IMG/VR virus record: IMGVR_UViG_3300050821_009835
Span: 1 to 64,000 of that record
Strand: one strand, 5' to 3'
DNA length: 64,000 nucleotides
Shown here: one piece after another, positions 10,852-33,022 of the stretch
Numbering within the stretch: position 1 is the first letter of the stretch
Layout: each line of letters opens with the position of its first letter
Made by a program: the position numbers and the translations under genes
The notes under the pieces: generated by a model
Database searches by the model: none
The model's input: the letters and a program-made list of their open reading frames with translations, nothing else
Told to the model about the DNA's origin: nothing

Positions 10852-11124
10852 TTGAAACAGTCTCCTATCGCCCGATTTTGCTTCTATTGCGGGCGGACAC
10901 TTTCTCGTCGAACAAAAACTCGTGATCATTTACAACCTAAGAGCAGGCATGGAAGTAGTGCTCGTTACAACATCGTGGACGCATGTCGTCCTTGCAATGC
11001 CCTAAAAGGTGCCCTCGCCCTCGAGGAATTCAGGGTGGTGATGGCATATCGAGCCGGACAAATTAAAGCTGCTAAAATGCGTTTTCCTGGGGAAATTAAA
11101 AAACCACTATCTCAAACCAAATAG
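10852..11124 (+). CDS. HNH endonuclease
   Basis: CFYCG...TRDHLQPKSRHG...NIVDACRPCNALKG. Confidence 0.85.
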   Translation: MKQSPIARFCFYCGRTLSRRTKTRDHLQPKSRHGSSARYNIVDACRPCNALKGALALEEFRVVMAYRAGQIKAAKMRFPGEIKKPLSQTK

Positions 11125-12072
11125 ATTTTTCTTCTTAGCAGCTTCTACTATACGTCGACGACGTTCCACGGCTCTTTGAACTTGAGGATGATTTACGGCT
11201 GCGCTTGCGGCTTGCTGTTGGAGTTCGCGCCAATTAGGCGGTGCATCAAACACTTCAGGGATAGAGGGAAGAGATGGAGGTGCTGTTCTTCGGAGCGGCC
11301 TGGGAGCCATACGATTCGGGAGAACAGGATCTGCGAGAGTTGGGTTGATCGCTGGCGTCAGGGTAGTCGGCAGGGCATTCAAGGATGGCCAGAGATCGGG
11401 GTGCAACGATTTAATTTTTGCAATTAGTTTAGGCCTGTTTACTCTCTTGAGCATCGAGTCGTGCTTTTCACGATAGTGGAAAATAGCTTCCGGGACAATA
11501 ACAACCTTCCAACCTCGCTTTACTATGTCAATCCAGAGATTCCAATCCTCGTAACCAATATGCTCTTTGTCGTATCCACTAAGTGCGGGGTTGTACCCTC
11601 CAACTTCCATAAGAACACTGCGTCTGATGAGAGAGCACACGGGTATGCAATTGTCCATCTTGAGTTGGTCCAAAGTGGGAGAGGACGTGTGCCAGGTGTA
11701 ATCCTTAATGCCAAAGCAAGCTGCGAAGGTGCCAACTATTCCTACCTCATCACTCATCTGAGGTACAGTCTTGCTGAGGTAATCTCTGTCAATCCAGTCA
11801 TCTGAATCCAAAGGAAGAATGAATTTCCCTGAGGATGCAGCTATGCCAGCATTTCTGGTTAGAGATAACCCTCTATTCTTCTGGGAGATTACTCGTACTC
11901 CTTTCCCCTCATAACTTCTCGCTACGGCTAAAGAATTATCAGTAGAGCCATCGTTTACTACAATAATTTCCGTGTTCCCATAATCTTGCTCCAGCGCCGA
12001 TTCAATGGCCTGAGAAAGATATTGAGCGTGGTTAAAAACCGGGATGATAATAGAAACTTTGGACATTGCCAT
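11107..12072 (-). CDS. Glycosyltransferase family 2 with Pro/Arg-rich C-terminal tail
   Basis: VSIIIPVFN..YLSQAIESAL.Q..EIIVVNDGSTD..RNAGI..ILPLDSDD..GYEDW. Confidence 0.92.
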   Translation of the reverse strand: MAMSKVSIIIPVFNHAQYLSQAIESALEQDYGNTEIIVVNDGSTDNSLAVARSYEGKGVRVISQKNRGLSLTRNAGIAASSGKFILPLDSDDWIDRDYLSKTVPQMSDEVGIVGTFAACFGIKDYTWHTSSPTLDQLKMDNCIPVCSLIRRSVLMEVGGYNPALSGYDKEHIGYEDWNLWIDIVKRGWKVVIVPEAIFHYREKHDSMLKRVNRPKLIAKIKSLHPDLWPSLNALPTTLTPAINPTLADPVLPNRMAPRPLRRTAPPSLPSIPEVFDAPPNWRELQQQAASAAVNHPQVQRAVERRRRIVEAAKKKNLFGLR

Positions 12073-12075
12073 CTT

Positions 12076-12753
12076 TCATTTACGACCATCCTCGGAAAAT
12101 GTGGAACGGATGGTCAATTCTGTTACTTCCACTGTTTTAGGGAGGGAAAGTATAAATTCAATAGTATCGGCCACAGACTCTGGTTGCATCAGGAGCTCTG
12201 GCTTGTAAATGCGATCCTCTTGTTCATAGAGGGATTTTAAGAGTGGTGTGGCAATTCTTCCCGGAAACAATGATAGAACTCTCACACCTTTTTCATTTGC
12301 TTCGATTCTAAAACTATCGGCAAAGGCTCGTAGAGCGTGCTTCATAGCAGCGTATTGCTCTAACTCGGATCGTTGTACAAAAAGACCAGCAAACGAGTTT
12401 ACAAACACTATTTGACCCTGTGCTGCTGCAAGTAAAGGGAAGAATCTGCGGGTAACGATGTACGGTGCTCGGAAGTTGATATTGTACTGAATGTCCAAGT
12501 CTGCCGGATCATGGCTTTTCAAAAGAACCCCGGCGCTGTGAATGAGAATATCTAATTTGCCCTCTTCAGCCAGGGCTTGAGATATAGTGTCTCTGCCCTC
12601 TTCGGTTCCTATGTCTGCAAGCACCCCAATACATCCGGCCTGAAAATTGTCTTTTCTGCCTACACCGTACACTTTCACACCCTTCTCTACTAACTTTTGA
12701 GTGATAGCTTTCCCCAAACCGCCTGTAGAGCCGATTACTAAGGCTGTTTTCAC
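12076..12753 (-). CDS. Short-chain dehydrogenase/reductase (possible NDP-sugar ketoreductase)
   Basis: GSTGGLG, HSAG, YAAMK catalytic motif. GTG start at 12753 has an AGGAG RBS and overlaps the fcl stop. Confidence 0.85.
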   Translation of the reverse strand: MKTALVIGSTGGLGKAITQKLVEKGVKVYGVGRKDNFQAGCIGVLADIGTEEGRDTISQALAEEGKLDILIHSAGVLLKSHDPADLDIQYNINFRAPYIVTRRFFPLLAAAQGQIVFVNSFAGLFVQRSELEQYAAMKHALRAFADSFRIEANEKGVRVLSLFPGRIATPLLKSLYEQEDRIYKPELLMQPESVADTIEFILSLPKTVEVTELTIRSTFSEDGRK

Positions 12754-13694
12754 ATGTTCTCCTGCTGTTTGATGTACCACGCTATGGTTTTGTCCAGTCC
12801 TTCTGAAAGAGTAGTACGCGCTGTGAAACCGAATTCTTGCAACGCACGCTCGGTGTTCAAGCATCGTTCAGGCTGACCATCAGGCATTGTAGAGTCGAAA
12901 AGAATCTCGCCAGTGTAACCTACTTTTTGCGCGATCATGGTTACAAGATCGCTTATTGCAGTTGTGCAACCCGTGCCAATATTAACGGGTGCACCCCCAT
13001 CGTATTTCTCCGTCGCCATTACAACTGCTTTGGCTGCATCTTCAATATAGAGAAATTCACGAAAAGCGTTACCACTGCCCCAGACACTAACAGGAGATTG
13101 CGCGTTAATAGTGGCTTCATAAAATTTCCGAATCAGAGCGGGCATTACATGAGAACTGCTGGGATTGAAGTTGTCATGAGGACCATAAAGATTAACAGGT
13201 AAGAGGTGTATCACGTTGAACTTGTACTGGTCTCGATAGGCTTGACCCATCACCATCAAAGACTTCTTTGCAATGCCGTAAGGGGCATTAGTTTCTTCAG
13301 GATAGCCATTCCACAAATCGTTCTCGTTGAATGGAACCGGAGTAAATTTTGGATATTCGCAGACCGTTCCGAGTTGCACGAATTTTTCTACCCCTTGTTT
13401 ATGGGCTGCGTGCATCAATAGGATGCCCATTAGGGCATTATCATAAAAGAGATCGGCAGGTCGTTCTTTGTTCAATCCTATGCCACCACAGTGAGCAGCG
13501 CAATGAATTATGATGTCAGGAACGGTCTTTTGAAGTACAGTATCAATCTGCTCTTTGACTCGTAGATCGTATTCGATTGACGTGGGTGCGGATACTTCTC
13601 TACACCCGCGCTGGTGTAATTCTGAAACAATATGCTGTCCGAAAAAACCCGCTCCACCTGTGACGAGGACGCGTTTGCTGGTTAAATCAATCAT
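12750..13694 (-). CDS. fcl: GDP-L-fucose synthase
   Basis: [68 protein letters not shown]. Confidence 0.93.
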
Positions 13695-14665
13695 TGGAGT
13701 GCCACCTTTTCTCGCTTTGCATCGATCAAATCTGAATCCACCATCCTACGCACAAGATCTCGAAACTTAATTTGAGGCTCCCAGCCTAATACTCTTTTCG
13801 CCTTAGAAGAGTCACCCAGAAGAATATCCACTTCGGTTTTTCGATAGTATTTTGGGTCAATTCCAACGTACTCATGCCAGTCCATTCCGAGATAGCCAAA
13901 GGCCTCGTCTAAAAGTTCCCGAACTGTGTGCGTCTCTCCTGTAGCAATGACAAAATCATCGGGAGTATCTTGTTGCAACATAAGCCACATAGCGTTTACA
14001 AACTCTGGGGCGTATCCCCAGTCTCGTTTAGCCTCCAAATTTCCCAGCAGTAACTTTTCTTGCAAACCCAGTTTAATCCTAGATGTTGCCTTAGTGATCT
14101 TACGTGATACAAAAGTCTCCCCTCTTCGTTCAGACTCATGGTTGAATAAGATGCCATTACACGCAAACATCCCCATCTCTCGATAATTGACTGTGGTCCA
14201 AAAAGCAAATTGCTTTGCTATTCCATACGGGCTACGTGGGTAAAATGGGGTATTCTCATTTTGCGGTATCTCCTGAACTTTCCCATAAAGCTCACTAGAT
14301 GAAGCTTGATAGAATTTGGCTCCAGGACTTTGGGCCTTGATCGCTTCAAGAAGCCGGAGAGTTCCCAAACCGTCTACGTCAGCGGTATATTCAGGGATAT
14401 CAAAACTGACACGCACGTGGCTTTGTGCACCCAGATTGTAGACTTCATCCGGCTGGATCTCTCCTATGAGGCGGCTCAGGGCGCTGCCATCTGTCAAGTC
14501 GTTGTGATGAAGATGAAGTTGGTCGAAGATGTGGTCTATTCGCCCGGTATTAAAACTGCTGGAACGACGGATGATACCGTGAATCTCATAGTCCTTCTCT
14601 AATAGAAGTTCCGCAAGGTATGAACCGTCTTGACCCGTGATTCCAGTTATTAATGCTTTTTTCAA
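13691..14665 (-). CDS. gmd: GDP-mannose 4,6-dehydratase
   Basis: [69 protein letters not shown]. Confidence 0.97.
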
Positions 14666-15207
14666 TCTAACACTACCCGAGCAATGCTCATCTCTACCTT
14701 GGCTTGTGGTGACAATCTCAAGATGCCGTTAACGCAGGGACAAACATTCTCTTCACATTTGTGATCCGAGTAAAGATCAGTGTTGATGATGTCATCAACC
14801 AAGATTACACTATGAGTCAGTTTTCTATTGAGTAGATATTCAAGTTCATAATGCCCAGAAAACTTGTGCTTTGCTGAACTGAGTGGGCCGGGGTCATCTG
14901 AACCTAAATGGGCATCCAGCCAGAATAGAATACGTTCATTGGGTAGATTCTTCACTATCTGAGGGAGAAGAATCTCACTGTCCCCTTGGTACAAGTGAAC
15001 GTTGTTCACGCCCAAGAATTTATTTTTGCAGTACTCGTAGCGTTCTGCGTGAAGCTCTATGGAATACACTTCTTTGAAGATATGACGGGCGAACTCTACT
15101 GATCTTCCATCATTGGTTCCAGTCTCAACAAAGGTTTCTAAGCCATAGGTATCGTGGTAGAACTTCATCTGGTTGTGCTTGTAGACTTCAAGTTCTTGCC
15201 AAGACAT
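14662..15207 (-). CDS. SAM-dependent methyltransferase-like protein
   Basis: FVETGT.DG, SIELH, LFWLDAH, ILVDD. Start at ATG 15207 (TAATG coupling). Confidence 0.6.
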
Positions 15208-16397
15208 TATTCCTGGGTTGAAGGTAGGCATTTTATCCTTTCTGGATAAGGGGTAAAATAATCCCCTTGGTAAGTCTCCGCGTATCGTTTGAAGATTTCT
15301 GTTGCATAGTTCCAAGAGAAAATACAGGTAGACTCAGGCTGAGCATCAAGCCAGTCTTGAGGAGATCGCACCTCAATTTGTGTTCCCGGAATAAACTTCC
15401 CGATTTTCGCTGGGGCGTCATCAGCCACGGCGTCAATCAAGGTGTGATCAATACCGCAATAATTCATCATCACTGTTGCTTTCGCCGCCGCCCCAAATCC
15501 CCAGATCCTCTTTCCTTGACTTTTGAAGCGCAAGAGAGTGTTTTTCAGGTCGTAGGCAACTTGGTCGGCATACTGTTGTAGGGTATGTACATTCTCTAGC
15601 CCATATTCAACGAACGGGAATGTAGTGGAAGCGATACCTACAAGGTCTGGATACTCCTTCTTACATGTGACGCGGAGGGAGCCGCCTTGCGATGGAAGTT
15701 GCTCTACGTTTGCAATGTACAGCCCATGACGACTGAAGAGACGATCCAGGGATTTGAAGGAAAAATAATAGCAGTGCTCGTGGTAGATAGTGTCGAACGT
15801 GCCCTTATTCAGCAGGTCGCCAAGGTAAGGAACTTCGATCATGCAAATTCCTTCTGGCTTTAAAATTTCTGCAATCCCAGCCACGAAATCATTGATATCC
15901 GGTACATGAGCTAGAACATTATTGGCGTGGATAACATCAGCTTTGGGTAGAGTGAGTGCTAAGTCGTGAGTGAAGAATTCCGGTATAGTTGGGATGCCTT
16001 TCTTAACAGCAACTTCGGCAGGTCCTAGCGCCGGGTCAACCCCTAGAACAGTAAAGCCGTGATCTTTGTAAAATTGCAGCAAGTAGCCGTCATTGCTGGC
16101 AAGTTCGATCACTAGAGCATCTGTGGGAAGTGTTTTGACAGTTCTTTCGACTAGGACTTTTGCAGAGTCTACTACAGATTTGCAGACGGTAGAGAAGTAC
16201 AGATATTCTACAAACATCTTTTCAGGCAAAACGTAATTTCGGATTTGTCCCAATGCGCAAGATGCACAGTACATGATATCTAGAGGATGCTTCTCGAATG
16301 CTTCGTCCCGGGAGGTGAGAAGTTCATTCGCTAGGGGAGTTTTTCCAAGAGAGAATATCATTTCGGTGTTATCACCGCAGCTGCGACAGTTCATCAT
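15207..16397 (-). CDS. NDP-sugar C-methyltransferase (Zn-binding, TcaB9/EryBIII-like)
   Basis: CRSCG..LGKTPLAN, ELASNDGYLL, HANNVLAHVPD, FDTIYHEH, GFGAAAKA, KIGKFIPGT. Confidence 0.88.
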   Translation of the reverse strand: MMNCRSCGDNTEMIFSLGKTPLANELLTSRDEAFEKHPLDIMYCASCALGQIRNYVLPEKMFVEYLYFSTVCKSVVDSAKVLVERTVKTLPTDALVIELASNDGYLLQFYKDHGFTVLGVDPALGPAEVAVKKGIPTIPEFFTHDLALTLPKADVIHANNVLAHVPDINDFVAGIAEILKPEGICMIEVPYLGDLLNKGTFDTIYHEHCYYFSFKSLDRLFSRHGLYIANVEQLPSQGGSLRVTCKKEYPDLVGIASTTFPFVEYGLENVHTLQQYADQVAYDLKNTLLRFKSQGKRIWGFGAAAKATVMMNYCGIDHTLIDAVADDAPAKIGKFIPGTQIEVRSPQDWLDAQPESTCIFSWNYATEIFKRYAETYQGDYFTPYPERIKCLPSTQE

Positions 16398-17332
16398 ATA
16401 CCTAGCCTCTCAACCATCTTTACATTGTAGTATTCTGGGTTATCCCAGTCCGAGAATTTATCGACATTGGCCGCAAGTTCTTGGACGATCTGTTCAACCC
16501 TTTGCTGGGGATTGAATGCCAGAATAGATTTTGCTTTCTCTATAGAGATTTTGTAATTACGTTTATCTGGATTCGTGGTAGTGTTAAGTTTTACTCCCAT
16601 GAGATTAGCCATGATTTCAGCTATCTGCCCAACTGTGTAATTTTCAGATGCTATGTTGAATGCCCCAGAAATGCCCATATCCGCTTCCACAGCTTTAACG
16701 TATGCTTGCGCGGCGTCAGCAATACCTAGAATGGGCCTCCAGATCTCTGGATTGCTCGCAGTGATCATGCCGTCTCTAACGGCGGACTTGTACATGGCAT
16801 TTATGATGAGGTCCAAACGCATCCTTGGACTGTACCCACAAACCGTGCCTTTACGCAGGGTAATAACAGAGAAATTCTCATCCTGCAAATGTAAAACTGC
16901 CTGTTCCCCTAGCATCTTAGAAATCCCGTAAGGATGTTTACAGATTGGTGGATCTTCCTCTACACATATCCTATCCGTCAGATATTCATAGATAGAACAT
17001 GTGCTGGCATAAACGAATCGTTTGACGTGAGCCTGTTTTGCAATGTATGCTAAGTACGCGGGTGCCGATGTATTGAGAATGAAATTCTTTCCCGGAGAGA
17101 GTTCACAGGTAGGGACACTGGACATTCCAGCTATGAAAACAACTCGTTCATAGGGTTCTAAATCACTTTCTGTTAAATCAAAAACATCTCTGTTGTACAA
17201 CCCGATACCACCAGGCAGATGATTACCAAACCATAAAAGATCCACTACATCTACGCTGTGTCCATGTTCTAATAAGGCGGGCACTAAACGTGATCCCACA
17301 TACCCAGCTCCTCCTGCTACAAGAATTTTCAT
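16394..17332 (-). CDS. NAD-dependent NDP-sugar epimerase/dehydratase
   Basis: ILVAGGAGYVGS, YASTCSIY, PYGISK, RMRLDLIIN. ATG 17332 overlaps the upstream stop. Confidence 0.88.
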   Translation of the reverse strand: MKILVAGGAGYVGSRLVPALLEHGHSVDVVDLLWFGNHLPGGIGLYNRDVFDLTESDLEPYERVVFIAGMSSVPTCELSPGKNFILNTSAPAYLAYIAKQAHVKRFVYASTCSIYEYLTDRICVEEDPPICKHPYGISKMLGEQAVLHLQDENFSVITLRKGTVCGYSPRMRLDLIINAMYKSAVRDGMITASNPEIWRPILGIADAAQAYVKAVEADMGISGAFNIASENYTVGQIAEIMANLMGVKLNTTTNPDKRNYKISIEKAKSILAFNPQQRVEQIVQELAANVDKFSDWDNPEYYNVKMVERLGI

Positions 17333-25185: not shown

Positions 25186-25784
25186 AAGATAGCAACGTGA
25201 CGATCATGCTTTCCGAAATTATAAAATTTGAGTTCTTTGTGAAATCGATCCACCGCTATTTCTACAACTGCTTTTGCGGCACCCGGCCAATGAGAATCAG
25301 CGAAATCATCTACAATAACAACACCACCCTCTACCATACGGGGGAGTACGAATTCTAACGCCGCCTTAGTGGGTTCATACAAGTCTACGTCAATGTGAGC
25401 GAATGCGATACGGGAATCTTCTAAGCCAGCGAAGGTATCGGGTATCGTACCTGGGTGTAAAATCGCAAAATCAGCATTTACAAAACCTCGAACATCCTCG
25501 ACAGAGGTAGCGGTAAACATACCTTTCTTTGGATAGGTACCATCTTCTGAGTTTATGTTAGGAAATCCCGAAAAGGTGTCAAACAATCGGAGATGGCGTG
25601 GGCGATATCGTAAAACTTCTGCCAGGATTCTAGCACTCCCGCCCCGAAATACTCCACATTCCCAAAATTCGCCTTGGAGGGAAGCTGCATCTCCCGCATT
25701 GCTATATAGAGATCGGGCACGATTGACGTCCATCTGCAATCGGGGTTTTACTAATTCGAATATTTCCTGAAAGGACATCCTCAT
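25182..25784 (-). CDS. TylF/MycF/NovP-family sugar O-methyltransferase
   Basis: WECGVFRGGS, LFDTFSGFP, AHIDVDLYE, GGVVIVDDF. Confidence 0.88.
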   Translation of the reverse strand: MRMSFQEIFELVKPRLQMDVNRARSLYSNAGDAASLQGEFWECGVFRGGSARILAEVLRYRPRHLRLFDTFSGFPNINSEDGTYPKKGMFTATSVEDVRGFVNADFAILHPGTIPDTFAGLEDSRIAFAHIDVDLYEPTKAALEFVLPRMVEGGVVIVDDFADSHWPGAAKAVVEIAVDRFHKELKFYNFGKHDRHVAIL

Positions 25785-26569
25785 TTTCTTCCTGAAATAC
25801 GGCGACTTTTTGATTTGATGGTTGGGTTGGGTTTATACAACTCTTTTAATCCCATGCCTTTGCACGGATAGGAATCCAATGGTAGTGTATACATCTTGCC
25901 ATCTTGGTCTAAATGCACAGGGAGTACACCCCCGTGAGCCATGATTTTGAATCCTGCTTTCGTAACCTTGTCGCAAAAATACAGATCGTCTGTCCCACCC
26001 TCATGAGCACAGACACTTGGTTCGCCATCCCCTAAGTCTATAATTTTGTCTACGGGATTCTCTCGAGGTTCAAAAAACCAAGGTTTAGAGAGGTGTTTAA
26101 AAACTTCTGTTTTGATAAGCATGGCACCTGTTCCCAAGCCAGCGCACTCGAATATATCTCCCACTTTCCATTTGTAGTATGGTCCACCACCGAGTTTCTT
26201 AAACACTATGGGCTGAGGAGGATCGGACTTAGTGCAGTAGATACCCCCGCATATCATAATAGAAGGGTCTTTTTCTATTTCTGTATGCAGATGAGTCAAA
26301 GTGAAGTTGGGGCAGATAGTATCGTCGTCCAGAAAGAACAGGTACTCGGCTCCTATATCCACGACTTTCTCCGCTATAATCTCCCGATTCTTGGCCCTAT
26401 CTGCGTGCTTCTCTAGTCGATTTCTACGTTCTATATCGGGATTACCTCTGACCATCCACGCAACAGACATGCCAACAGGCGGCCCTAAGCCAGGCAGGCT
26501 CATAGCCCAGCGTATGTCTACTTTGCGCCCAGAAGTTGCTATTCCAATTGCTATGCCGTCGAAACTCAT
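25781..26569 (-). CDS. GT2-like glycosyltransferase (phage type)
   Basis: NREIIAE..YLFFLDDD, GGIY, GLGTGAMLIK..VF..PWF, DDLYFC..GFKI. Confidence 0.75.
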   Translation of the reverse strand: MSFDGIAIGIATSGRKVDIRWAMSLPGLGPPVGMSVAWMVRGNPDIERRNRLEKHADRAKNREIIAEKVVDIGAEYLFFLDDDTICPNFTLTHLHTEIEKDPSIMICGGIYCTKSDPPQPIVFKKLGGGPYYKWKVGDIFECAGLGTGAMLIKTEVFKHLSKPWFFEPRENPVDKIIDLGDGEPSVCAHEGGTDDLYFCDKVTKAGFKIMAHGGVLPVHLDQDGKMYTLPLDSYPCKGMGLKELYKPNPTIKSKSRRISGRK

Positions 26570-28111
26570 TTACAGATAGAATACTGTGCCTTGCAAAGTT
26601 CCAGTCGTAGTCGTAGTCGTGGAAGAATATGTTGTCGATAGAGAGATCGTGATACCATTGGAGAAGTTTGCCAAAGCAATGGCACCTGGCGGGATACAAA
26701 ATCCTGTACCATAACCAGTAACTCCTGCAGGACCCGTGTAAACCGCAAAAGACATTATCCAGTTTGCCAATGTCGTGTTGGTTGTGTTCCAGAACTGTAA
26801 AAACAGCTGGGTTGTTGTAGTGGATGTAGCTGTAAAGAAGACGTTGAATCCATATAAGTTTCCAGCAGTCCCTTTGACGTTCGCTACACCAATGCCAGAG
26901 TGAGAACTGACAAGACTGGTTGCCGCACCCAATGAAGCATTGGGTATATTGACAGCGTTAACCGCCATAACTTCCGTGCCTGTGGGTGCAGTTCCTAGGG
27001 CGGAAATTGCAGCCGTGATGACGTTGGTCTGGTCGCAGATTGCAGTGAATACGCCATTGGTTTTGGCGTTGGTTACGCCCAAGTTCCCAACAACGTTCAC
27101 ATCCACCACGCCTGTAGCGGTTGTGGTTTGATTTGTACGGGCTAGTGTCGTCCCCATGAACAACGAGGCATTAACACCAAGGGCATTGCCAGTTGGGGCA
27201 GTGGTACCAAAAGTGTTAGGCGTACCAAGAGCCGTAGTGCCTGAGAACATGGAAGCATTAACAGTACCTGCAATTACTGCACCCGGTGTCGTGCCAAAAT
27301 TTACGGCTGCACCCAGAGCAGTTCCTGCCCAGGCTTGCAAATCAGAGTTAAGTGCACCGTGCAGATCGGTAACGGGTAAAACCATATCCCCAGTTGTGTA
27401 GGTCACTGTAGAATATGCAGTTTCAGCAATTGCCGGTAATACGCCAATCAGAGTAGCGCCCGGAGCTGCATTGTTGTTGGTGAGAGTACCAACAGCACTG
27501 ACATTGAGGGCACTGCCCGTAGCGGAAAGCGCAGTCTGCCCAGCGAATAATTCGGCATTAACAGCTTGCACATCAACCGTGACGGCTGGAGCGGTTCCCC
27601 AAACAGTTTGTCCCGAAACAAAAACATTGAGCGATGATACAGGAGGGCTTCCTGCAGTTGTAAAAGTTGCCCCGGTAATGCCCACAGTCCCGTACACAAC
27701 ACTGTTTGCATTGACGAACGAATCTGCAGCATAGCCGATTATGACGGTTCCGGTTCCAAGAATAACTGTACTCAGAAGAACCTGGAAATAGGGGATAGCT
27801 GTGAGGTTGAATTCAAAAGCAGCGTAAGTATTGTTCTGGAGATTATAGGTAGGACCGATTATGGTTGTAGTGCCGGGTGTGATGCCTTCGAGATTGAACC
27901 AATTTGTACCATCTAAAGAGCCCTGAAATGTGACTGTGCCCTGAGTGATTGTACTAGATTGTTTGAGGGTAACAATCAGTGTATTGTACGAGTAATCTTG
28001 GCTTACAAGTGAAGCCACTGTATTAAGAGTAGTGGCTTGACTCCACGTAACAAATGAAGCATTCGATTCACCAACTGATAAACTAGCTTGAATTGGGAAC
28101 TGTGATTCCAT
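26570..28111 (-). CDS. 513-aa Thr/Ala/Gly/Asn-rich modular putative virion protein
   Basis: Shares the TITQGxVTFQGxxDGTNW and GTLTNNNAAP..LPAIAETAY..GDMVLPVTDLHGAL modules with the 827-aa gene. Its stop is directly adjacent to the next ATG. Confidence 0.6.
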   Translation of the reverse strand: MESQFPIQASLSVGESNASFVTWSQATTLNTVASLVSQDYSYNTLIVTLKQSSTITQGTVTFQGSLDGTNWFNLEGITPGTTTIIGPTYNLQNNTYAAFEFNLTAIPYFQVLLSTVILGTGTVIIGYAADSFVNANSVVYGTVGITGATFTTAGSPPVSSLNVFVSGQTVWGTAPAVTVDVQAVNAELFAGQTALSATGSALNVSAVGTLTNNNAAPGATLIGVLPAIAETAYSTVTYTTGDMVLPVTDLHGALNSDLQAWAGTALGAAVNFGTTPGAVIAGTVNASMFSGTTALGTPNTFGTTAPTGNALGVNASLFMGTTLARTNQTTTATGVVDVNVVGNLGVTNAKTNGVFTAICDQTNVITAAISALGTAPTGTEVMAVNAVNIPNASLGAATSLVSSHSGIGVANVKGTAGNLYGFNVFFTATSTTTTQLFLQFWNTTNTTLANWIMSFAVYTGPAGVTGYGTGFCIPPGAIALANFSNGITISLSTTYSSTTTTTTGTLQGTVFYL

Positions 28112-30020
28112 GAAAACTTCCTTTACAGAAGACTTTCTTTAGCTACAAATGTCTGACTACAACGCCGCGCTTTGTTCGGACCACTGAATAGATGCAAGCA
28201 TTTGAGCAGTGCCTGTAATGGATTGTCCACAAATGGAGAATTTATCTCCTGGCGTGCCTGCTGCGATGGCTTGGAGAAGAGCTTGTTGAATGTTAACCGT
28301 CCCCACGTATCCAGAAAAGACCACAGTCCCGGCAGTGATAGCAGATGCAACTATATCGGTTTTCATATTGCCTTCTGTTCCAGTAAAGGTCGCGCCCGTC
28401 AGAGTTCCGTTCTTTACTACACGAACCAACGCGATAGTACCATTGCTGCCGACGTTGATGCCGCGTAGCAAGAAGATAATTGAAGATGAGTTTGTCTCGA
28501 TAGAAAGCAAAGGAATTAGAGTTGTACCTACTGCGACCTGCGTAGCGGCGTTATCGAAACTGTAATATGACAGAGATGAAGCATTTGCTTCATCAACTGG
28601 TACCATACGGACTGCACCACCCAGAGAAGTGGTTGCTAGAACTTGATCACCCTGCGTGTAAGCTTCAGCAGAAGCTGTAGCAATATAGTCTAACGAGCCA
28701 ATATTAGTTGTCGTTGGGGCTGCGTTGTTGTTAGTCAGGTTGCCCACAACTGTAGTATTTCCTGACGAACCTGCGATTTCAACGTTAAGTGCGCCGCCAG
28801 TATTCGTTAAGGCTGTTGTACCACTAAAGAGCGAGACGTTTGCGTTGACTGCTTTAACAGCACCCGGCCCCGTACCAAAGTTTGCCATGGCACCCATGGC
28901 GTTTGTGCCGTCGCTAATTTCAGTAAACAGCGGATTAGCTGCGCTGATTGCCGCAGTTCCTTGGAAAATAGAAGCGTTTACACCCACTACGTTGACTGCG
29001 GCGGGAGCTGAACCAAAGGCCGTAACGCCTGTTGCACCCAACTGAACTCCAGCAACAGCTTGGAGATCCTCGTTGAGAGCACCGTGTAGATCTGTGACTG
29101 GAAGAACTAGATCACCAGTGGTGTAGGTGACCGTGGTATACGCAGTTTCAGCGATTGCAGGCAAAACTCCAATCAACGAAGCTGTGGGCGCTGCATTGTT
29201 GTTAGTTAGAGTACCATCAACTATTGTTGTGCCTGATAAAGGTAAGTTGGTCGGTTCTGTGGCTAACGACGCCCAGTATGGCGTTACAGATCCAGATCCT
29301 GTGAATGTGGTAGAGACATCAGTGCGAATACCGACGTAACCTTGAGCCAAAATGAGGAATGCAATATTCGTGCTGGCCTGCAGAGTATAAGGATTCGTCA
29401 ACGGTGCATAAGTGTTTGGATTAAGCACCTGAGCAACAGGAATCGTCGTCCAGTTTACGTTGTCATAAGTTCCCTGGAATGTTACGGCACCAGCAGTGAT
29501 AGTAGTTGTTTGATCAAGAGCTACTAGATAAGCCGGGGCACCCGACAGTTGACCTTGTGTTGTTGTTCCAGTTGGATATTGGAACGTTCCACCTGGGGTG
29601 CTACCGCCAGCCCAGACTGTTCCTGTCTTAAACTGCACGCCAGGAAAGTTTAACAGGTTGGCTGATTGATCCTGCTGCACTGCCGTAGCTTGCGTGGCTG
29701 TTGGAGCAGGTTCTGTCGTGCTGTAGATGCCACTTACTGCCAACGCATTTGTTGGGGCTGTGCCAGATCCAACTGTGGAATCTAATGTGGCCGCCCCGTG
29801 GCCTTCAATTCCCACCATTTGTACGCCGGATGCGGCTGTAACAACAGCAGTGCCTCCAACAGCTTGCACATCAGTATTGAGAGCCCCGTGTAGGTCAGTA
29901 ACAGGCAGTACCATGTCGCCTGTTGTGTAGGTGGCGGTTGTATATGCCGTTTCAGCAATTGCGGGTAGTACCCCGAGGTTGTTATTGGACGGGACTGCAT
30001 TGTTATTCGAGAGAGTGCCA
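27341..30020 (-). repeat. Dispersed ~150-bp coding repeat, three copies (~27341-27490, ~29061-29215, ~29871-30020)
   Basis: Each encodes GTL(T/S)NNNA(A/V)P...GVLPAIAETAY.T.TYTTGD.VLPVTDLHGALN. Copies differ mostly at synonymous sites. A degenerate fourth copy lies near 28620-28750. Confidence 0.85.
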
Positions 30021-30640
30021 GATACTGTAGAGCCCGCACTAGTAGTGATGCTTGGTTCATATGCTAATGTCGCCCAGTTTGGTGTAACAGATCCTGACCC
30101 CAAAATTACAGTAGACAATTCAGCACGGATTGCAATAAAACCCTGAGACAGGATGAGGAACGGAACATTCGTGCTCGGTACGAATGTGTAAGGGTTTGTT
30201 AACTGCGCAAAAGTTGCAGGGTTTAAAACTTGCGCAGTTGGAATTGTTATCCAGTTGGTGCCATCATAGGTCCCCTGAAAAGTCACTGCACCTTGAGTGA
30301 TGGTTGTAGTCTGGTCGAGTGCTATTAAATAAGCTGGAGCGCCTGCAAAAGCACCAATGGTTGCGGTGCCTGTAGCGTATTGAAGTGTGTTAGAACCTGT
30401 GCCGCTATTCCATGCAGCACCCGTTTTGAACTGAATTCCAGGAAAGGCAAGCGAGTTTCCCGATTGATCGGATTGGGCAGCAACTAACTGTCCGTTAGCT
30501 GGAGAGGGTGCTGTGGTGCTATAAACTGCACCATCCTGAATCGCAGCTGCAGGAGCGGCAGCTCCAGGAACTCCCAGAACTGCATTACCCGCGATATCGT
30601 TTAGCCCAAATACTGTGATGCCAGTGTATAAATTAGGCAT
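28157..30640 (-). CDS. 827-aa Thr/Ala/Gly-rich internally duplicated putative virion protein
   Basis: Two tandem ~190-aa units (FPGxQFKTG..PAYLxALDQTTTITxGAVTFQGTYD..VLNP..TNPY..PVTDLHGAL). C-terminal domain (TTLIPLLSI..KNGTL) is related to that of the 447-aa gene. Confidence 0.65.
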   Translation of the reverse strand: MPNLYTGITVFGLNDIAGNAVLGVPGAAAPAAAIQDGAVYSTTAPSPANGQLVAAQSDQSGNSLAFPGIQFKTGAAWNSGTGSNTLQYATGTATIGAFAGAPAYLIALDQTTTITQGAVTFQGTYDGTNWITIPTAQVLNPATFAQLTNPYTFVPSTNVPFLILSQGFIAIRAELSTVILGSGSVTPNWATLAYEPSITTSAGSTVSGTLSNNNAVPSNNNLGVLPAIAETAYTTATYTTGDMVLPVTDLHGALNTDVQAVGGTAVVTAASGVQMVGIEGHGAATLDSTVGSGTAPTNALAVSGIYSTTEPAPTATQATAVQQDQSANLLNFPGVQFKTGTVWAGGSTPGGTFQYPTGTTTQGQLSGAPAYLVALDQTTTITAGAVTFQGTYDNVNWTTIPVAQVLNPNTYAPLTNPYTLQASTNIAFLILAQGYVGIRTDVSTTFTGSGSVTPYWASLATEPTNLPLSGTTIVDGTLTNNNAAPTASLIGVLPAIAETAYTTVTYTTGDLVLPVTDLHGALNEDLQAVAGVQLGATGVTAFGSAPAAVNVVGVNASIFQGTAAISAANPLFTEISDGTNAMGAMANFGTGPGAVKAVNANVSLFSGTTALTNTGGALNVEIAGSSGNTTVVGNLTNNNAAPTTTNIGSLDYIATASAEAYTQGDQVLATTSLGGAVRMVPVDEANASSLSYYSFDNAATQVAVGTTLIPLLSIETNSSSIIFLLRGINVGSNGTIALVRVVKNGTLTGATFTGTEGNMKTDIVASAITAGTVVFSGYVGTVNIQQALLQAIAAGTPGDKFSICGQSITGTAQMLASIQWSEQSAAL

Positions 30641-30696
30641 GTTTTCTCTCCTAAACTATTGGCAGATCTTCTCTATCTATTAAACAGGAAGTGATT

Positions 30697-32040
30697 TTAT
30701 CGTTCAGTCCATCGTAAAGCAGCAGCAGCATGTGTAGAGTTTCCGTTAACATCTCCATCAATTGCAATCGTTAAAATATCTCCAACGGCAGGAGACCCTG
30801 AAAATCCAAAAAGAATTTCGTAAGTGTTAGCACGAGTTCCCAAAGTCGTGTAACCTGAATCTATGGCTACACCGCCAGTAATTGTAGTGGAATCAACGTC
30901 CATTTGAGCATTGGTACCCGACACATTTACCCAGTTTGTCCCCCCACCCAAGGTCGCATTCTTGTAAAGGGTCCATTGGGAAATGGCTGGCATTGCTGTG
31001 ATATCCAGCCCTGTAAGCGTAAAAACGATTGATCCAGCTCCTGACTTAGGTCGTATCGAGAGAAGTGGGGTTAGAGTTGTGGGAACACTGACAATTAGGT
31101 TCCCTGTATTGACAGAATAGGGGGCTGCATTAGAGGTAGGAGTGCCGGGGTTAACAACGTAAACATTGAGAGCTTCCGTTGCTGAATAATCAGTGAAAGT
31201 GAGTGGGGCTAAAGTTAATTCAATCGCTGCTAGAGAGCTTTCGGCAGCGGGGTCCTGCACTACCCAGGGGGATGTGCTTTGGGTGACTGGAACACTACTA
31301 GGGAATACCACTTGAGCTTCAGTTGGATTTACAACGTATACATTGAGTGCATTCTCAGCTGGGCTACCATAAGGGGTCAGGACCAGATTCTGCAATTCCT
31401 TATTCGCATCTTCGGCACCCATTAAGACTGGTTGAATCGTAGTAGGTGGGGTATAAGTTGGAGGAAAATTTATGGCGCTCCCAGCAGCATACAATCCCTG
31501 TACCAGCGGGTCAGCCCAAACTGCACTCGTATTACCCGGTTGAGAGATTAGAATTTCTCCTGGATGAGTTGGTAAATTGCCCGCGATGTCGATTGTCCCA
31601 ACCTCGTTGGCATTAACAACACCTTCCAGAGTATAGGTTAGCACAGCCCCTGTACTCACGGTCATGGTTGACGTGAGATTTGTGCCACTTGTAATGTCCG
31701 CAAAAGAAGTTGAAGATGCCCCAGTGTTGGTGAAAGTGACTTCACCATTCGGGCCAAACGTGATAACAATTCCTGTGCCCGGGATAAAGTTCAAGGTACT
31801 TTGATCTGTAACCGGGGTGCCATTAACTTCGATCAGACTAGAGGGGATAGCAGGCAGTAAGCAAGGATCAATCGTTCCTGCCGCACCTGTCATGACAAGG
31901 CTGTAGGGATTTGCAGAGCAACTGTAGGTTGCGCCAGCTCGCCACTCCGTCCAGGGAACTTGGCCAACTTTGTCACGACGATTGACAATGACCGAAAGTT
32001 CCAGTGCATCTTGGATTGGATTTTGAATGGTGTTACTCAT
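30697..32040 (-). CDS. 447-aa Thr/Pro-rich putative virion protein
   Basis: ALNVYVVNP occurs twice; C-terminal TTLTPLLSI..KNATL domain shared with the 827-aa protein. Confidence 0.6.
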   Translation of the reverse strand: MSNTIQNPIQDALELSVIVNRRDKVGQVPWTEWRAGATYSCSANPYSLVMTGAAGTIDPCLLPAIPSSLIEVNGTPVTDQSTLNFIPGTGIVITFGPNGEVTFTNTGASSTSFADITSGTNLTSTMTVSTGAVLTYTLEGVVNANEVGTIDIAGNLPTHPGEILISQPGNTSAVWADPLVQGLYAAGSAINFPPTYTPPTTIQPVLMGAEDANKELQNLVLTPYGSPAENALNVYVVNPTEAQVVFPSSVPVTQSTSPWVVQDPAAESSLAAIELTLAPLTFTDYSATEALNVYVVNPGTPTSNAAPYSVNTGNLIVSVPTTLTPLLSIRPKSGAGSIVFTLTGLDITAMPAISQWTLYKNATLGGGTNWVNVSGTNAQMDVDSTTITGGVAIDSGYTTLGTRANTYEILFGFSGSPAVGDILTIAIDGDVNGNSTHAAAALRWTER

Positions 32041-33022
32041 ATCTGTACCATGCGATTATTTCAGATCCTGCTTCCGGAGGATTCACAAACGTGATGATGT
32101 CACTGGAAATAGTGTAATCGACGCCAACAGCTAAGACTTGCCCATTTTCAACAAGAATCAGACTGGCTGTTGGAACTGGAGTATGAACCAGGTTGAATAC
32201 TGTGTTGGACCCGTCAATTGTACCTGATGGTGTTTCTCCATCTGAAAACTCAACACCAGCAGTTACACTCCCTCCCCCGTATCTATACCACGCGACTATT
32301 TCATATCCAACCGCTGGAGGATTTATGAATGTTACGATGTTGCCAGAAATAGCGTAGTCTACACCGACGGTTAGCACTTGTCCATTTTCAGTAAGGATTA
32401 GACTGGCTGCTGGACTTGGTGCATGTGCCAAAGTAAAGATTGTATTGGTCCCATCAATAGCTCCCGATGGGATCTCTGCATCAGAGAATTCTACACCCGA
32501 TGATGCCGTTCCACCAATGAACAGTTGTTCTAGATCGTATATGAATCGAGCTGCGACAGGACCATCAAGTCTGCGAGGGGCTTGTGTTGAGGGGACGCCA
32601 GATGAGGCGTAGTATAGTTCAATAAAACGGGAACTTGCATCCAAAACAGTTGCTCCTGCACTTTCTAACGCAGAGGCATAGTTTGAAGCGATGAAATTAA
32701 AAGTGAGGGCAGTTGGGGATATTCCAGTTACGCGACCAATTTGACCATTGAGGAAGTTTGCATTGGTGAAATTGGTGAAAATAACCAATTGGTTTAGTTT
32801 AGCTGCACCTGGGCTACACGAAAGAACCAAACTATTATTGTTGAGAACAACATTGGTAATATTGGAAGATACGATAACTTGTTGATTCGATTCATACCAT
32901 TGTACACCATTTGTCTCTACAAAAATTTCTCGGCCAAGAGGATCAACAGCAGGGTCAGGCTTGAAAATCCAGAGCGCAGATTGAATGGTTGTATTGGATT
33001 GCCAGCCGCTAAATGGTGCCAT
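32033..33022 (-). CDS. Putative virion protein with tandem phage-type repeat
   Basis: Two copies of VEFSDxExPSGxIDGxNTxFxLxHxP.PxASLILxENGQVLxVGVDYxIS.xIxTFxNPP. Confidence 0.65.
   Translation of the reverse strand: MAPFSGWQSNTTIQSALWIFKPDPAVDPLGREIFVETNGVQWYESNQQVIVSSNITNVVLNNNSLVLSCSPGAAKLNQLVIFTNFTNANFLNGQIGRVTGISPTALTFNFIASNYASALESAGATVLDASSRFIELYYASSGVPSTQAPRRLDGPVAARFIYDLEQLFIGGTASSGVEFSDAEIPSGAIDGTNTIFTLAHAPSPAASLILTENGQVLTVGVDYAISGNIVTFINPPAVGYEIVAWYRYGGGSVTAGVEFSDGETPSGTIDGSNTVFNLVHTPVPTASLILVENGQVLAVGVDYTISSDIITFVNPPEAGSEIIAWYRYE

What the first reader, a model, noticed from the sequence alone, without database searches (positions are those of the whole stretch)
11107..33022. Candidate self-contained virion-glycosylation system: repeat-built Thr-rich structural genes coupled to a full glycan-building kit
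Seen: one minus-strand run begins with four Thr/Ser/Asn-rich, non-enzymatic proteins. It continues, with the stop at 26570 abutting the ATG at 26569, into ~9 GT-like genes, gmd/fcl, four methyltransferases and two SDR-fold enzymes, mostly joined by ATGA/TAATG overlaps. A tail-fibre-like gene and a tail-type repeat gene are embedded among the enzymes. No flippase, Wzy or export gene was recognised. Established: chloroviruses and mimiviruses glycosylate capsids or fibrils with their own enzymes, and some mycobacteriophages have glycosylated virions. Inference: the sugars are attached in the cytoplasm to phage structural proteins rather than to a host O-antigen, with an unusually complete donor, transfer and tailoring set.
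Basis: partly seen in the sequence, partly recalled or inferred. Interest (0 to 1): 0.85.

Follow-up and report, generated by a model that had tools for sequence, protein, structure and literature searches.

The report
Phage fibre genes coupled to glycan kit
A giant soil phage has about 15 kb of sugar-building enzymes joined to the operon of its threonine-rich fibre-like proteins, and the first enzyme resembles protein-glycosylating enzymes and sits beside such proteins in many other phages, so sugar-coated phage fibres are plausible but unproven.

Summary
Window 11107-33022 holds four Thr-rich, Lys/Arg-poor, repeat-built proteins. They are followed on the same strand by about 18 enzyme genes: 7 supported glycosyltransferase (GT) genes, gmd/fcl, 2 firm and 2 weak methyltransferases, and 2 further SDR enzymes. 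Most junctions are TAAATG or ATGA. The window has no multi-pass membrane protein.

The window is the start of a 265/340-kb uncultivated soil phage contig. Its megaphage relatives keep the fibre module but lack the sugar island, and they are just as Thr-rich. Thr-richness is therefore not a glycosylation signature.

The gene abutting the 513-aa protein is a GT-A enzyme. Its model best matches STIV A197, then the collagen GTs COLGALT1 and LH3. Its close homologues (50% identity or more) lie within two genes of a Thr-rich protein in 13 of 15 other phage loci. Six of those proteins carry the same C-terminal jelly-roll domain. The homologues are often fused to an O-methyltransferase or paired with a PLOD-type GT.

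This supports fibre glycosylation by at least the first GT. No data show that the whole kit serves the virion. The published reading of such jumbo-phage clusters, host surface polysaccharide remodelling, remains a strong rival. Verdict: a new variant of a known kind, with moderate to high interest.

The parts
32033..33022 (-). 329-aa fibre-module protein with two tandem ~80-aa repeats
   Evidence: ORF. Repeat family D2. PHROG virion structural protein families 11431/10330 and a weak tail-fibre family 2710. The N-terminal half is conserved in the megaphage relatives.
30697..32040 (-). 447-aa Thr-rich fibre-module protein; its C-terminal domain is shared with the 827-aa protein
   Evidence: Thr 13.4 %. 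The C-terminus hits phrog_1645, virion structural protein. It is 32 % identical to residues 688-823 of the 827-aa protein.
28157..30640 (-). 827-aa Thr-rich modular fibre-like protein (two copies of jelly-roll module A, three of module B)
   Evidence: Internal 229-aa duplication at 65 % identity. 247 homologues, all hypothetical proteins, many on 0.3-0.48-Mb contigs.
26570..28111 (-). 513-aa Thr-rich fibre-like protein: N-terminal jelly roll (aa 20-131), unmodelled repeat shaft, and the C-terminal jelly-roll 'c513' domain (aa ~400-513, nt 26573-26914)
   Evidence: Thr 17.9 %, Lys+Arg 0.8 %. AF2 model with two confident beta-sandwich domains. Foldseek matches YomS/XepA, Ena, a phage cement protein and CBMs. 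Thr clusters at aa 429-434, 442-447 and 498-503 fall in predicted loops.
25781..26569 (-). GT-A glycosyltransferase (A197/COLGALT1-like); its ATG directly follows the stop of the 513-aa gene
   Evidence: TAAATG junction. Homologues carry PF00535/PF13641. Invariant DDD motif. AF2 pLDDT 92.8. Foldseek top hit is STIV A197 (E 5e-11), followed by COLGALT1, mimivirus R699, LH3 and GalNAc-Ts.
25182..25784 (-). TylF/Methyltransf_24 O-methyltransferase
   Evidence: Pfam. The same domain is fused to the GT in homologues P0124, P0165, L053 and L070.
24538..25185 (-). GT2 glycosyltransferase
   Evidence: PF00535, E 7e-21.
23837..24568 (-). GT6 glycosyltransferase (probable start 24541)
   Evidence: PF03414, E 3e-21. 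74 % identical homologue in L029.
22452..23918 (-). Two-domain GT: Galactosyl_T (GT31-like) N-terminus plus GT6 C-terminus (probable start 23840)
   Evidence: Pfam. 62 % identical homologue in L029.
21679..22455 (-). GT11 (alpha-1,2-fucosyltransferase family)
   Evidence: PF01531, E 3e-31.
20900..21796 (-). Conserved protein of unknown function (probable start 21694); possibly a GT
   Evidence: 150 homologues with no Pfam or PDB match; conserved W-x-D and H-R-x-D motifs.
19971..20903 (-). GT-B type glycosyltransferase (Glyco_trans_1_2-like family)
   Evidence: 611 homologues. 13 of 40 sampled homologues hit PF13524, and some are fused to GT2 or methyltransferase domains.
19546..19932 (-). 128-aa Thr/Gly-rich non-enzyme ORF
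   Evidence: Thr 14.8 %, Lys+Arg 1.6 %. No family hit. Has its own Shine-Dalgarno-like spacer.
18887..19564 (-). Possible FkbM-type methyltransferase
   Evidence: PF05050, E 9.5e-4, below the curated cut-off.
18186..18890 (+). 234-aa Ser/Thr-rich ORF on the opposite strand, splitting the run
   Evidence: Composition. Called as a gene by JGI. No family hit.
17329..18156 (-). 275-aa protein of unknown function, first gene of the second sub-operon
   Evidence: No hits. Promoter-like site at 18192-18163.
16394..17353 (-). Extended-SDR NDP-sugar epimerase/dehydratase/reductase
   Evidence: PF01370, E 4e-26. Partial GalE/RmlD-like NCBIfam hits.
15207..16397 (-). NDP-sugar C-methyltransferase (Methyltransf_13/23/14 architecture)
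   Evidence: Pfam.
14662..15315 (-). Unknown protein with a class-I methyltransferase-like motif (probable start 15231)
   Evidence: No Pfam hit. Weak PDB methyltransferase hits, E 0.11.
13691..14665 (-). GDP-mannose 4,6-dehydratase (gmd)
   Evidence: PF16363, E 9e-135.
12750..13694 (-). fcl-like GDP-4-keto-6-deoxymannose epimerase/reductase
   Evidence: PF01370, E 8e-57. ATGA overlap with gmd. The specific function is inferred.
12076..12864 (-). Classical SDR oxidoreductase
   Evidence: PF00106, E 7e-30.
11107..12072 (-). GT2 glycosyltransferase, last gene of the island
   Evidence: PF00535, E 3e-35. 73 % identical homologue in L029.

Best explanation
A late, fibre-linked operon that glycosylates the phage's own Thr-rich surface or fibre proteins in the cytoplasm.

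Shown:
- The gene order, the coupling of the junctions and the enzyme families.
- The GT-A fold and DXD motif of the first GT.
- The conserved adjacency of that GT to Thr-rich proteins in other phages.

Inferred:
- The A197/COLGALT1-like GT (25781-26569) is translated right after the 513-aa protein and puts the first sugar on it. The likely sites are the Thr-rich loops of its C-terminal jelly-roll domain.
- The adjacent Methyltransf_24 enzyme methylates that sugar.
- The following translationally coupled GT2, GT6, GT31-like/GT6, GT11 and GT-B enzymes extend it.
- gmd and fcl supply GDP-fucose from host GDP-mannose.
- The C-methyltransferase and the SDR enzymes make a methyl-branched or deoxy sugar.
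- The result is a fucosylated, methylated oligosaccharide coat on the fibres. It would mask them, stabilise them, or tune adsorption.
For: 1. Same strand, zero-nt TAAATG junction, and ATGA overlaps from the 513-aa gene through 19971.
2. The first GT is a soluble GT-A with an invariant DDD motif. Its best structural matches are STIV A197, then COLGALT1, mimivirus R699, LH3 and polypeptide GalNAc-Ts. Most of these act on proteins. A profile search of PDB sequences also puts A197 first.
3. Homologues of this GT at 50 % identity or more have a Thr-rich, Lys/Arg-poor ORF within two genes in 13 of 15 non-redundant loci. Six of these carry the c513 domain. The loci differ in genomic background; one runs fibre, GT, SU10-type portal, capsid. 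Across the whole family, such ORFs make up 22 % of genes at +-1-2 and 5-10 % further away (odds ratio 3.7, P 1e-5).
4. Among the megaphage-clade loci, the c513 domain was found only in the two that also have the GT, the window and L053.
5. In sister modules the GT is fused to Methyltransf_24, in the same order as in the window. In others a Pfam GT_PLOD (LH3-type) GT lies between the Thr-rich ORF and the GT.
6. The window has no priming transferase, flippase, polymerase or any multi-pass membrane protein.
7. A related sugar sub-cluster in a 155-kb viral contig is flanked on both sides by Thr-rich, Lys/Arg-poor ORFs.
8. Precedents exist: mycobacteriophage capsid and tail-tube glycosylation (cited in PMC12363180) and the STIV capsid with A197 (PMC10551542).
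Against: - There are no protein-level data of any kind.
- The fibre module is equally Thr-rich in relatives that have no GT.
- 24 of 26 viral loci with a c513-like domain have no homologue of the abutting GT beside it; other GT families were not screened there.
- The adjacency could mean only that fibre regions are hotspots for accessory genes, or that a receptor-binding protein travels with an enzyme that alters its receptor.
- In bacteria, the GT6, GT11 and GT31 families and gmd/fcl are typical of O-antigen synthesis on lipid carriers (my own knowledge).
- The second half of the island (18156-11107) is separated by an opposite-strand gene and has its own promoter-like site.
- A Foldseek ranking among GT-A folds is not a test of acceptor type.
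- Only 64 kb of a 265/340-kb genome was visible.
Confidence: 0.45

Rival explanations
1. Host-envelope remodelling. The island is an auxiliary 'LPS/capsule modification' cluster of the kind known from cyanophages and other jumbo phages. Its soluble GTs act on host lipid-linked O-antigen, core or EPS intermediates. Host enzymes export the product. The changed cell surface blocks superinfection or stops progeny sticking to debris. Its position next to the fibre genes reflects a hypervariable hotspot.
For: - Comparable clusters with up to 13 GTs (including GT11 and GT2) and NDP-sugar epimerases occur in S-SCSM2R, S-SCSM1 and P-SSM2. They are read as host cell-surface modification (PMC12801897).
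- The jumbo-phage survey describes GT-rich 'capsular polysaccharide modification' clusters proposed to pre-empt attachment (PMC7824862).
- The island is absent from all close relatives, so it is accessory.
- Bacterial O-antigen GTs are also soluble or peripheral, so the lack of transmembrane segments does not discriminate (my own knowledge).
Against: - Translational coupling to fibre genes argues for co-expression with them.
- The first GT resembles protein-directed enzymes and tracks Thr-rich proteins across unrelated phages.
- There is no initiating transferase, flippase, polymerase or ligase in the window.
- Surface remodelling is of little obvious use if the operon is expressed late. The timing itself is only inferred.
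Confidence: 0.3
2. Split function. Only the conserved pair of GT 25781 and methyltransferase 25182 serves the fibre protein. The other ~16 genes are separate cargo that builds a glycan for another target: the host surface, or another virion protein such as the capsid.
For: - In all other loci the fibre-linked module is just the GT, with or without Methyltransf_24, a PLOD-type GT or one GT2. It never includes NDP-sugar synthesis.
- The GT6, GT31-like/GT6, GT11 and GT2 sub-cluster travels on its own in L029 without the A197-like GT.
- The plus-strand gene and the promoter-like site split the island.
Against: ATGA coupling continues unbroken from the GT through the GT2, GT6, GT31-like/GT6, GT11, unknown and GT-B genes. 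The L029 sub-cluster is itself flanked by Thr-rich ORFs.
Confidence: 0.17
3. DNA hypermodification. The GTs decorate modified bases of the phage DNA to evade restriction.
For: - Phage GTs that build glycans on DNA are known (bioRxiv 10.1101/2023.12.21.572611, listed).
- The window encodes a nucleoside 2-deoxyribosyltransferase-like protein and a dATP/dGTP diphosphohydrolase-like protein.
- Relatives carry a Mom-family gene near the fibre module.
Against: - No hydroxymethylase or TET-type enzyme was recognised in or beside the island among the ORFs scanned.
- GT6, GT11 and GT31 with a GDP-fucose pathway are glycan-extending families.
- The island is linked to fibre genes, not to replication genes.
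- The nucleotide enzymes lie 35-50 kb away on the other strand.
Confidence: 0.03

Closest known systems
Mycobacteriophage virion glycosylation (Che8, Corndog, Myrna; Freeman et al. 2023, as summarised in PMC12363180 and PMC12619734)
   Same: Phage-encoded GTs are thought to act in the cytoplasm on the phage's own structural proteins. The glycans sit at C-terminal regions. The effect is shielding of the virion surface.
   Different: There the targets are the capsid and tail-tube subunits, only a few GTs are involved, and the system is proven by experiment. Here the putative target is a fibre-like jelly-roll domain, the kit has about 18 genes with its own GDP-fucose and methyl-sugar synthesis, and nothing is proven. 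Homology to Che8 gp110 was not tested.
STIV A197 glycosyltransferase with the glycosylated capsid protein B345 (PMC10551542)
   Same: It is the best structural match (E 5e-11, TM 0.70 on the target) and the best PDB profile match. Both are minimal viral GT-A enzymes with a DXD motif, presumed to glycosylate a virion protein.
   Different: A197 comes from an archaeal virus and is 17 % identical. A197's own acceptor is only presumed.
Collagen hydroxylysine glycosylation by COLGALT1 and LH3/PLOD3, with the mimivirus enzymes R699 and L230
   Same: The fold of the first GT matches COLGALT1, LH3 and R699. Sister phage modules add a Pfam GT_PLOD enzyme, giving a two-GT, protein-directed arrangement.
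   Different: No lysyl hydroxylase is present. The putative substrates have almost no lysine and no collagen repeats. The acceptor residue is unknown.
Chlorovirus PBCV-1 capsid glycosylation machinery (my own knowledge)
   Same: The virus encodes gmd and a GDP-fucose synthase, several soluble GTs and a GT-methyltransferase fusion (A064R). The capsid glycan is fucosylated and methylated and is made without the host's membrane pathway.
   Different: PBCV-1 is a eukaryotic virus, its target is the major capsid protein, and no sequence relationship to it was tested here.
LPS/capsule-modification clusters of cyanophages and jumbo phages (P-SSM2, S-SCSM1, S-SCSM2R; PMC12801897, PMC7824862)
   Same: Many GT families, including GT11 and GT2, plus NDP-sugar enzymes in a large phage genome. 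The clusters are accessory and vary between relatives.
   Different: Those clusters are not reported as translationally coupled to fibre genes. They are interpreted as acting on the host surface. The A197-like fibre-linked GT is not described there.
Wzx/Wzy-dependent O-antigen clusters with blood-group-like units, such as E. coli O86 (my own knowledge)
   Same: The combination of gmd/fcl, a GT11 fucosyltransferase, a GT6 alpha-1,3-Gal(NAc) transferase and a beta-1,3-galactosyltransferase-like enzyme.
   Different: The window has no wzx, wzy, chain-length regulator or priming transferase. It has extra methyltransferases and lies in a phage fibre operon.

Membership tests
Phage-encoded virion glycosylation system (mycobacteriophage type) | The phage itself encodes glycosyltransferases | tested here: met
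   Seven GT genes are supported.
Phage-encoded virion glycosylation system (mycobacteriophage type) | Glycan covalently attached to virion structural proteins | not testable with these tools
   This needs mass spectrometry or glycan staining of virions or of co-expressed proteins.
Phage-encoded virion glycosylation system (mycobacteriophage type) | Genetic linkage of the GT to its structural target | tested here: met
   TAAATG junction. 13 of 15 close-homologue loci have a Thr-rich ORF within two genes.
Phage-encoded virion glycosylation system (mycobacteriophage type) | Homology of the GTs to Che8 gp110 or Corndog gp38 | not tested
   No actinophage appeared in the tblastn search of the GT against 50,697 phage records. 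The only hits were two 31 %-identical matches to spring-water MAG phages.
Wzx/Wzy-dependent O-antigen or capsule gene cluster | Flippase (Wzx), polymerase (Wzy) or ABC exporter encoded in the cluster | tested here: not met
   No ORF in the 64-kb window has two or more convincing transmembrane segments, and no such Pfam hit was found. The rest of the genome was not seen.
Wzx/Wzy-dependent O-antigen or capsule gene cluster | Initiating phosphoglycosyl transferase (WecA/WbaP type) | tested here: not met
   None was found among the cluster proteins, and all of them are soluble.
Wzx/Wzy-dependent O-antigen or capsule gene cluster | NDP-sugar synthesis genes together with several GTs | tested here: met
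   gmd, an fcl-like gene, SDR enzymes, a C-methyltransferase and seven GTs.
Jumbo-phage/cyanophage polysaccharide-modification cluster | Accessory, variable cluster of paralogous GTs and sugar-nucleotide enzymes in a large phage genome | tested here: met
   Present in the window but absent from the syntenic relatives L005, L011, L012 and L013.
Jumbo-phage/cyanophage polysaccharide-modification cluster | The product is a host surface polysaccharide | not testable with these tools
   This is inferred in the literature as well (PMC7824862, PMC12801897).
GT-A fold glycosyltransferase (gene 25781-26569) | Rossmann-like GT-A fold with a DXD metal and nucleotide-sugar motif | tested here: met
   AF2 pLDDT 92.8. 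141 PDB matches at E <= 0.001; all 50 listed are glycosyltransferases or GT-like proteins. D81-D82-D83 invariant or nearly so in 63 sequences.
Phage tail fibre / receptor-binding protein (the four upstream proteins) | Recognisable fibre or virion-protein homology, or presence in the virion | tested here: inconclusive
   Only weak PHROG 'virion structural protein' and tail-fibre hits for the 447- and 329-aa proteins. Jelly-roll and CBM-like domains, with a few 'minor tail' or 'structural protein' matches in BFVD. No capsid, sheath or baseplate gene was seen in the window.

The most novel reading that the evidence does not exclude
A widespread and so far undescribed fibre-glycosylation module exists in uncultivated soil, peat and freshwater phages. 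It consists of a Thr-rich jelly-roll fibre tip plus an A197/COLGALT1-like GT, with or without a PLOD-type GT and an O-methyltransferase. In this megaphage the module has grown into a self-contained factory of about 18 genes that coats the fibres with a fucosylated, methylated, possibly histo-blood-group-like oligosaccharide. This would extend virion glycosylation from actinophages to a much broader set of phages.
Probability: 0.3. Interest if true: 0.8.

Novelty: new variant of a known kind. Interest (0 to 1): 0.6.

Why it matters
Glycosylated virions are established for chloroviruses, mimiviruses, some archaeal viruses and a few mycobacteriophages. In tailed phages generally, GT clusters are assumed to act on DNA or on the host surface. 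If the fibre-linked GT module found here really modifies fibre proteins, then virion glycans could be a common and overlooked factor in adsorption, host range, particle stability and immune or defence recognition among environmental phages. The module gives a simple two-gene pair to test in E. coli. If instead the island remodels the host envelope, it is a further and unusually complete example of a known jumbo-phage strategy.

Tried and rejected
- Cultured phages. DNA and protein searches of INPHARED with the region, the 827-aa protein, the GT and the c513 domain found no cultured relative.
- PDB sequence searches. The four fibre proteins and the unknown ORFs 14662, 17329, 19971 and 20900 gave nothing significant.
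- NCBIfam gave no hit for the unknown ORFs.
- Remote GT-A relationship. hhalign of the GT profile against 17329, 19971 and 20900 found no relationship.
- The ~300-aa Thr-rich proteins next to some GT homologues are not related to the c513 domain.
- Host inference from the TnpB gene failed. The best matches are 41 %-identical Bacillota MAGs. The window has no tRNA genes.
- Thr-richness as a marker of glycosylation was rejected. Relatives without a GT and most c513 proteins have the same composition.
- The gene upstream of the GT in L017 carries the PHROG label '2OG-Fe(II) oxygenase'. Pfam shows it is a PLOD-type GT domain, not a hydroxylase.
- No window gene is similar to the PLOD-type GTs or to the extra GT2 genes of the sister loci.
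- The promoter and terminator scans were no better than shuffled sequence.

Full report
WHAT IS THERE

The window equals the first 64 kb of IMG/VR contig IMGVR_UViG_3300050821_009835 (264,912 bp), with matching coordinates. A 340,335-bp metagenome contig, Ga0210388_10000011, is 100 % identical over the 10.8 kb that spans the fibre-enzyme junction.

The rest of the window encodes typical large-phage functions:
- a clamp-loader subunit;
- polynucleotide kinase, RNA ligase and peptide deformylase;
- an SNF2 helicase and a TnpB;
- a dual-specificity phosphatase and a NUDIX hydrolase.

There are no tRNA genes. No cultured phage matches at the DNA or protein level.

On the minus strand, 33022-26570 encodes proteins of 329, 447, 827 and 513 aa. 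None has a Pfam domain above threshold. Thr is 8-18 % and Lys+Arg is 0.8-3.0 %, against roughly 7-14 % in the enzymes.

These proteins are built from repeats:
- a 229-aa tandem duplication at 65 % identity in the 827-aa protein;
- a ~100-aa 'LTNNNAAP...' module present three times in the 827-aa protein and at least once in the 513-aa protein;
- two ~80-aa repeats in the 329-aa protein.

The stop of the 513-aa gene and the next start read TAAATG. The following junctions are ATGA overlaps, some only with the starts that JGI called.

Pfam, homologue annotation and fold give the enzyme list:
- Seven supported GT genes: GT2 twice, GT11, GT6, a GT31-like/GT6 fusion, an A197-like GT-A and a Glyco_trans_1_2-like GT-B.
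- gmd and an fcl-like gene.
- A C-methyltransferase and a TylF/Methyltransf_24 O-methyltransferase.
- Two weaker methyltransferase candidates.
- One classical and one extended SDR.

Two ORFs (17329 and 20900) stay unassigned.

Two Thr/Ser-rich non-enzyme ORFs are embedded. One of them, 18186-18890, lies on the plus strand. The 'single run' is therefore really two sub-operons.

No protein in the whole window has two or more convincing transmembrane segments.

THE FIBRE MODULE IS CONSERVED AND THE SUGAR ISLAND IS NOT

The four-gene module and its divergently transcribed neighbours (PNK, peptide deformylase and, in the relatives, Ro60/TROVE) recur in contigs of 332, 448 and 462 kb and in shorter ones.

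In none of these does a sugar cluster follow. The module ends with more fibre-like ORFs and then opposite-strand genes (PhoH, ClpP, MGMT). The island 11107-26569 is therefore an accessory acquisition of this phage.

The fibre proteins of the GT-less relatives are equally Thr-rich and equally modular. Composition alone says nothing about glycosylation.

WHAT THE FIBRE-LIKE PROTEINS LOOK LIKE

The AF2 model of the 513-aa protein has mean pLDDT 62.7. It contains two confident beta-sandwich domains: residues 20-131 at pLDDT about 95, and residues 409-513 at about 80. The repeat shaft between them is unmodelled.

Foldseek matches the sandwiches to:
- the prophage proteins YomS and XepA;
- Ena spore-appendage subunits;
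- a phage cement protein;
- carbohydrate-binding modules and lambda tail-tip parts.

Against viral models the matches are mostly uncharacterised Caudovirales proteins. A few are labelled structural, minor tail or host-specificity protein. PHROG hits for the 447- and 329-aa proteins are 'virion structural protein'.

A virion surface or fibre role is thus likely but not shown. No capsid, sheath or baseplate gene lies in the window.

THE KEY NEW EVIDENCE CONCERNS THE GENE THAT ABUTS THE 513-AA GENE

This is a divergent GT2-clan enzyme:
- Some of its homologues carry PF00535 or PF13641.
- A DDD motif is invariant or nearly so.
- The model is excellent, with pLDDT 92.8.
- The top PDB matches are STIV A197 (E 5e-11). 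After it come human COLGALT1, mimivirus R699, LH3 and polypeptide GalNAc-transferases.
- A197 is also the best profile-sequence hit.
- A197 is the essential GT of an archaeal virus whose capsid protein is glycosylated (PMC10551542).

The family occurs only on uncultivated phage-like contigs, largely from soil and peat samples by their JGI identifiers.

Its neighbourhoods are informative:
- In L036/L037 the order is Thr-rich 894-aa protein, GT (overlapping), SU10-type portal and major capsid protein.
- In L038, L016 and L053 (a 456-kb megaphage contig) an 808-941-aa Thr-rich protein is followed immediately by the GT.
- In L034 the two genes are convergent but adjacent.
- All of these neighbours share the C-terminal jelly-roll domain of the window's 513-aa protein (alignment A1).

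Counts over non-redundant loci with GT homologues:
- At 50 % identity or more, 13 of 15 have a Thr-rich, Lys/Arg-poor ORF within two genes. Six of these carry the c513 domain. Most of the others are a ~300-aa protein of an unrelated family.
- The two exceptions are 1.5-kb contigs.
- Below 50 % identity the figure is 10 of 33.
- Across the family, such ORFs are 22 % of genes at +-1-2 and 5-10 % further away (odds ratio 3.7, P 1e-5).

Further links:
- Several homologues are fused to a Methyltransf_24 domain, the same order as genes 25781 and 25182 in the window.
- In three loci the gene between the Thr-rich ORF and the GT is a Pfam GT_PLOD domain, the LH3-type collagen GT.
- Within the megaphage-clade loci, the c513 domain was detected only in the two that have the GT.

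LIMITS OF THAT EVIDENCE

- The association is one-directional. Of 26 viral loci with a c513-like domain, only two have the GT. Most are followed by more fibre-like genes.
- Adjacency may reflect the location of the GT in morphogenesis modules, or the co-mobility of a receptor-binding tip with an enzyme that alters the same receptor.
- The neighbour statistics do not correct for relatedness beyond 90 % clustering.
- A Foldseek ranking among GT-A enzymes does not establish acceptor type.

MECHANISM PROPOSED (INFERENCE)

The operon is expressed with the fibre genes. The A197-like GT initiates on the 513-aa protein. Three Thr clusters (aa 429-434, 442-447 and 498-503) fall in predicted loops of the C-terminal jelly roll, and several of these Thr/Asn positions are invariant in A1.

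The O-methyltransferase and the coupled GT2, GT6, GT31-like/GT6, GT11 and GT-B enzymes then extend and tailor the glycan. gmd and fcl supply GDP-fucose. The C-methyltransferase and SDR block supplies a modified deoxy sugar.

The set of GT31-like, GT11 and GT6 enzymes with GDP-fucose is the enzyme combination used for blood-group-like glycans in some O-antigens. That comparison rests on my own knowledge and is only a lead.

RIVALS

The published interpretation of GT-rich clusters in cyanophages and jumbo phages is host-surface polysaccharide modification (PMC12801897, PMC7824862). Nothing here excludes it for the bulk of the island.

A split model is also tenable. In it only the GT and methyltransferase pair serves the fibre, and the rest is separate cargo. 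The fibre-linked module elsewhere never includes sugar-nucleotide genes, and the GT6/GT11 sub-cluster travels independently in L029. That sub-cluster is, however, flanked by Thr-rich ORFs too.

DNA hypermodification is unlikely, given the enzyme families and the fibre linkage.

VERDICT

A kit of this kind is already known in large phages, so that part is not novel.

What appears new is:
- its translational coupling to fibre genes;
- the recurrent pairing of an A197/COLGALT1-like GT (with or without an O-methyltransferase or a PLOD-type GT) with Thr-rich fibre-like proteins across many uncultivated phages.

The pairing is directly testable with a two-gene co-expression.

My confidence that the system glycosylates the phage's own fibre proteins is about 0.45. 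For the first GT alone it is higher, about 0.6: the main explanation plus the split-function rival.

Noticed in passing
L017:9345-10004, L077:4291-5004, L079:1576-2256: In three phage contigs a Pfam GT_PLOD (LH3-type collagen glycosyltransferase) gene sits between a ~300-aa Thr-rich ORF and the A197-like GT. This makes a two-GT, collagen-glycosylation-like module, and no hydroxylase was recognised in the genes examined. PHROGs labels this family '2OG-Fe(II) oxygenase', which is misleading for these short proteins.
   Followed up: partly
window:50088-51206 (+): A full-length IS605-family TnpB (OrfB_IS605 plus the Cas12f1-like TNB domain) lies inside the phage genome. The nearest genomic relatives are only 41 % identical, in Bacillota MAGs. 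No flanking omega-RNA or TnpA was looked for.
   Followed up: partly
window:56797-57339 (+) and 61462-61944 (+): A nucleoside 2-deoxyribosyltransferase-like protein and a dATP/dGTP diphosphohydrolase N-terminal domain protein. Together with the NUDIX (59001-59699) and HAD (62359-63378) genes, they hint at non-canonical or modified bases in the phage DNA.
   Followed up: no
window:226-5115 (+): A 1629-aa Thr/Ser/Gly-rich, Lys/Arg-poor protein (Thr 12 %, Lys+Arg 2.1 %) at the contig start, with no Pfam or PHROG hit. It is probably another large virion surface protein. It is not similar to the 1625-aa Thr-rich protein next to the GT in L038.
   Followed up: partly
window:46518-49562 (+): A 1014-aa SNF2-family helicase. 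A ~370-residue insert between its SNF2 N-terminal and Helicase_C domains gives PHROG hits to P-loop families (terminase large subunit, primase, DnaC-like).
   Followed up: no
window:33129-39491 and loci L011, L012, L013: A conserved, divergently transcribed block next to the fibre module: polynucleotide kinase/phosphatase, RNA ligase and peptide deformylase. Relatives add a Ro60/TROVE-vWA protein and a Mom-family gene. This looks like an RNA-repair and Ro-like module that marks this megaphage clade.
   Followed up: no
L029:7382-20087: A 155-kb viral contig carries a sugar cluster of about 11 genes, with 53-74 % identical GT6, GT31-like/GT6, GT11 and GT2 genes. It is bracketed on both sides by opposite-strand Thr-rich, Lys/Arg-poor ORFs of 612 and 280 aa. 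This is a second case of a glycan cluster embedded among fibre-like genes.
   Followed up: partly
window:26849-26875 (aa 413-421 of the 513-aa protein): The c513 domain has an invariant Lys in the motif K-x-x-A-G-N-x-Y-G, in a protein that is otherwise 0.6 % lysine. This is curious given the collagen Hyl-GT-like fold of the neighbouring enzyme. No hydroxylase was found.
   Followed up: no
window:9289-10116 (-): A DUF6011-containing 275-aa protein lies just beyond the end of the sugar island. Its function is unknown.
   Followed up: no
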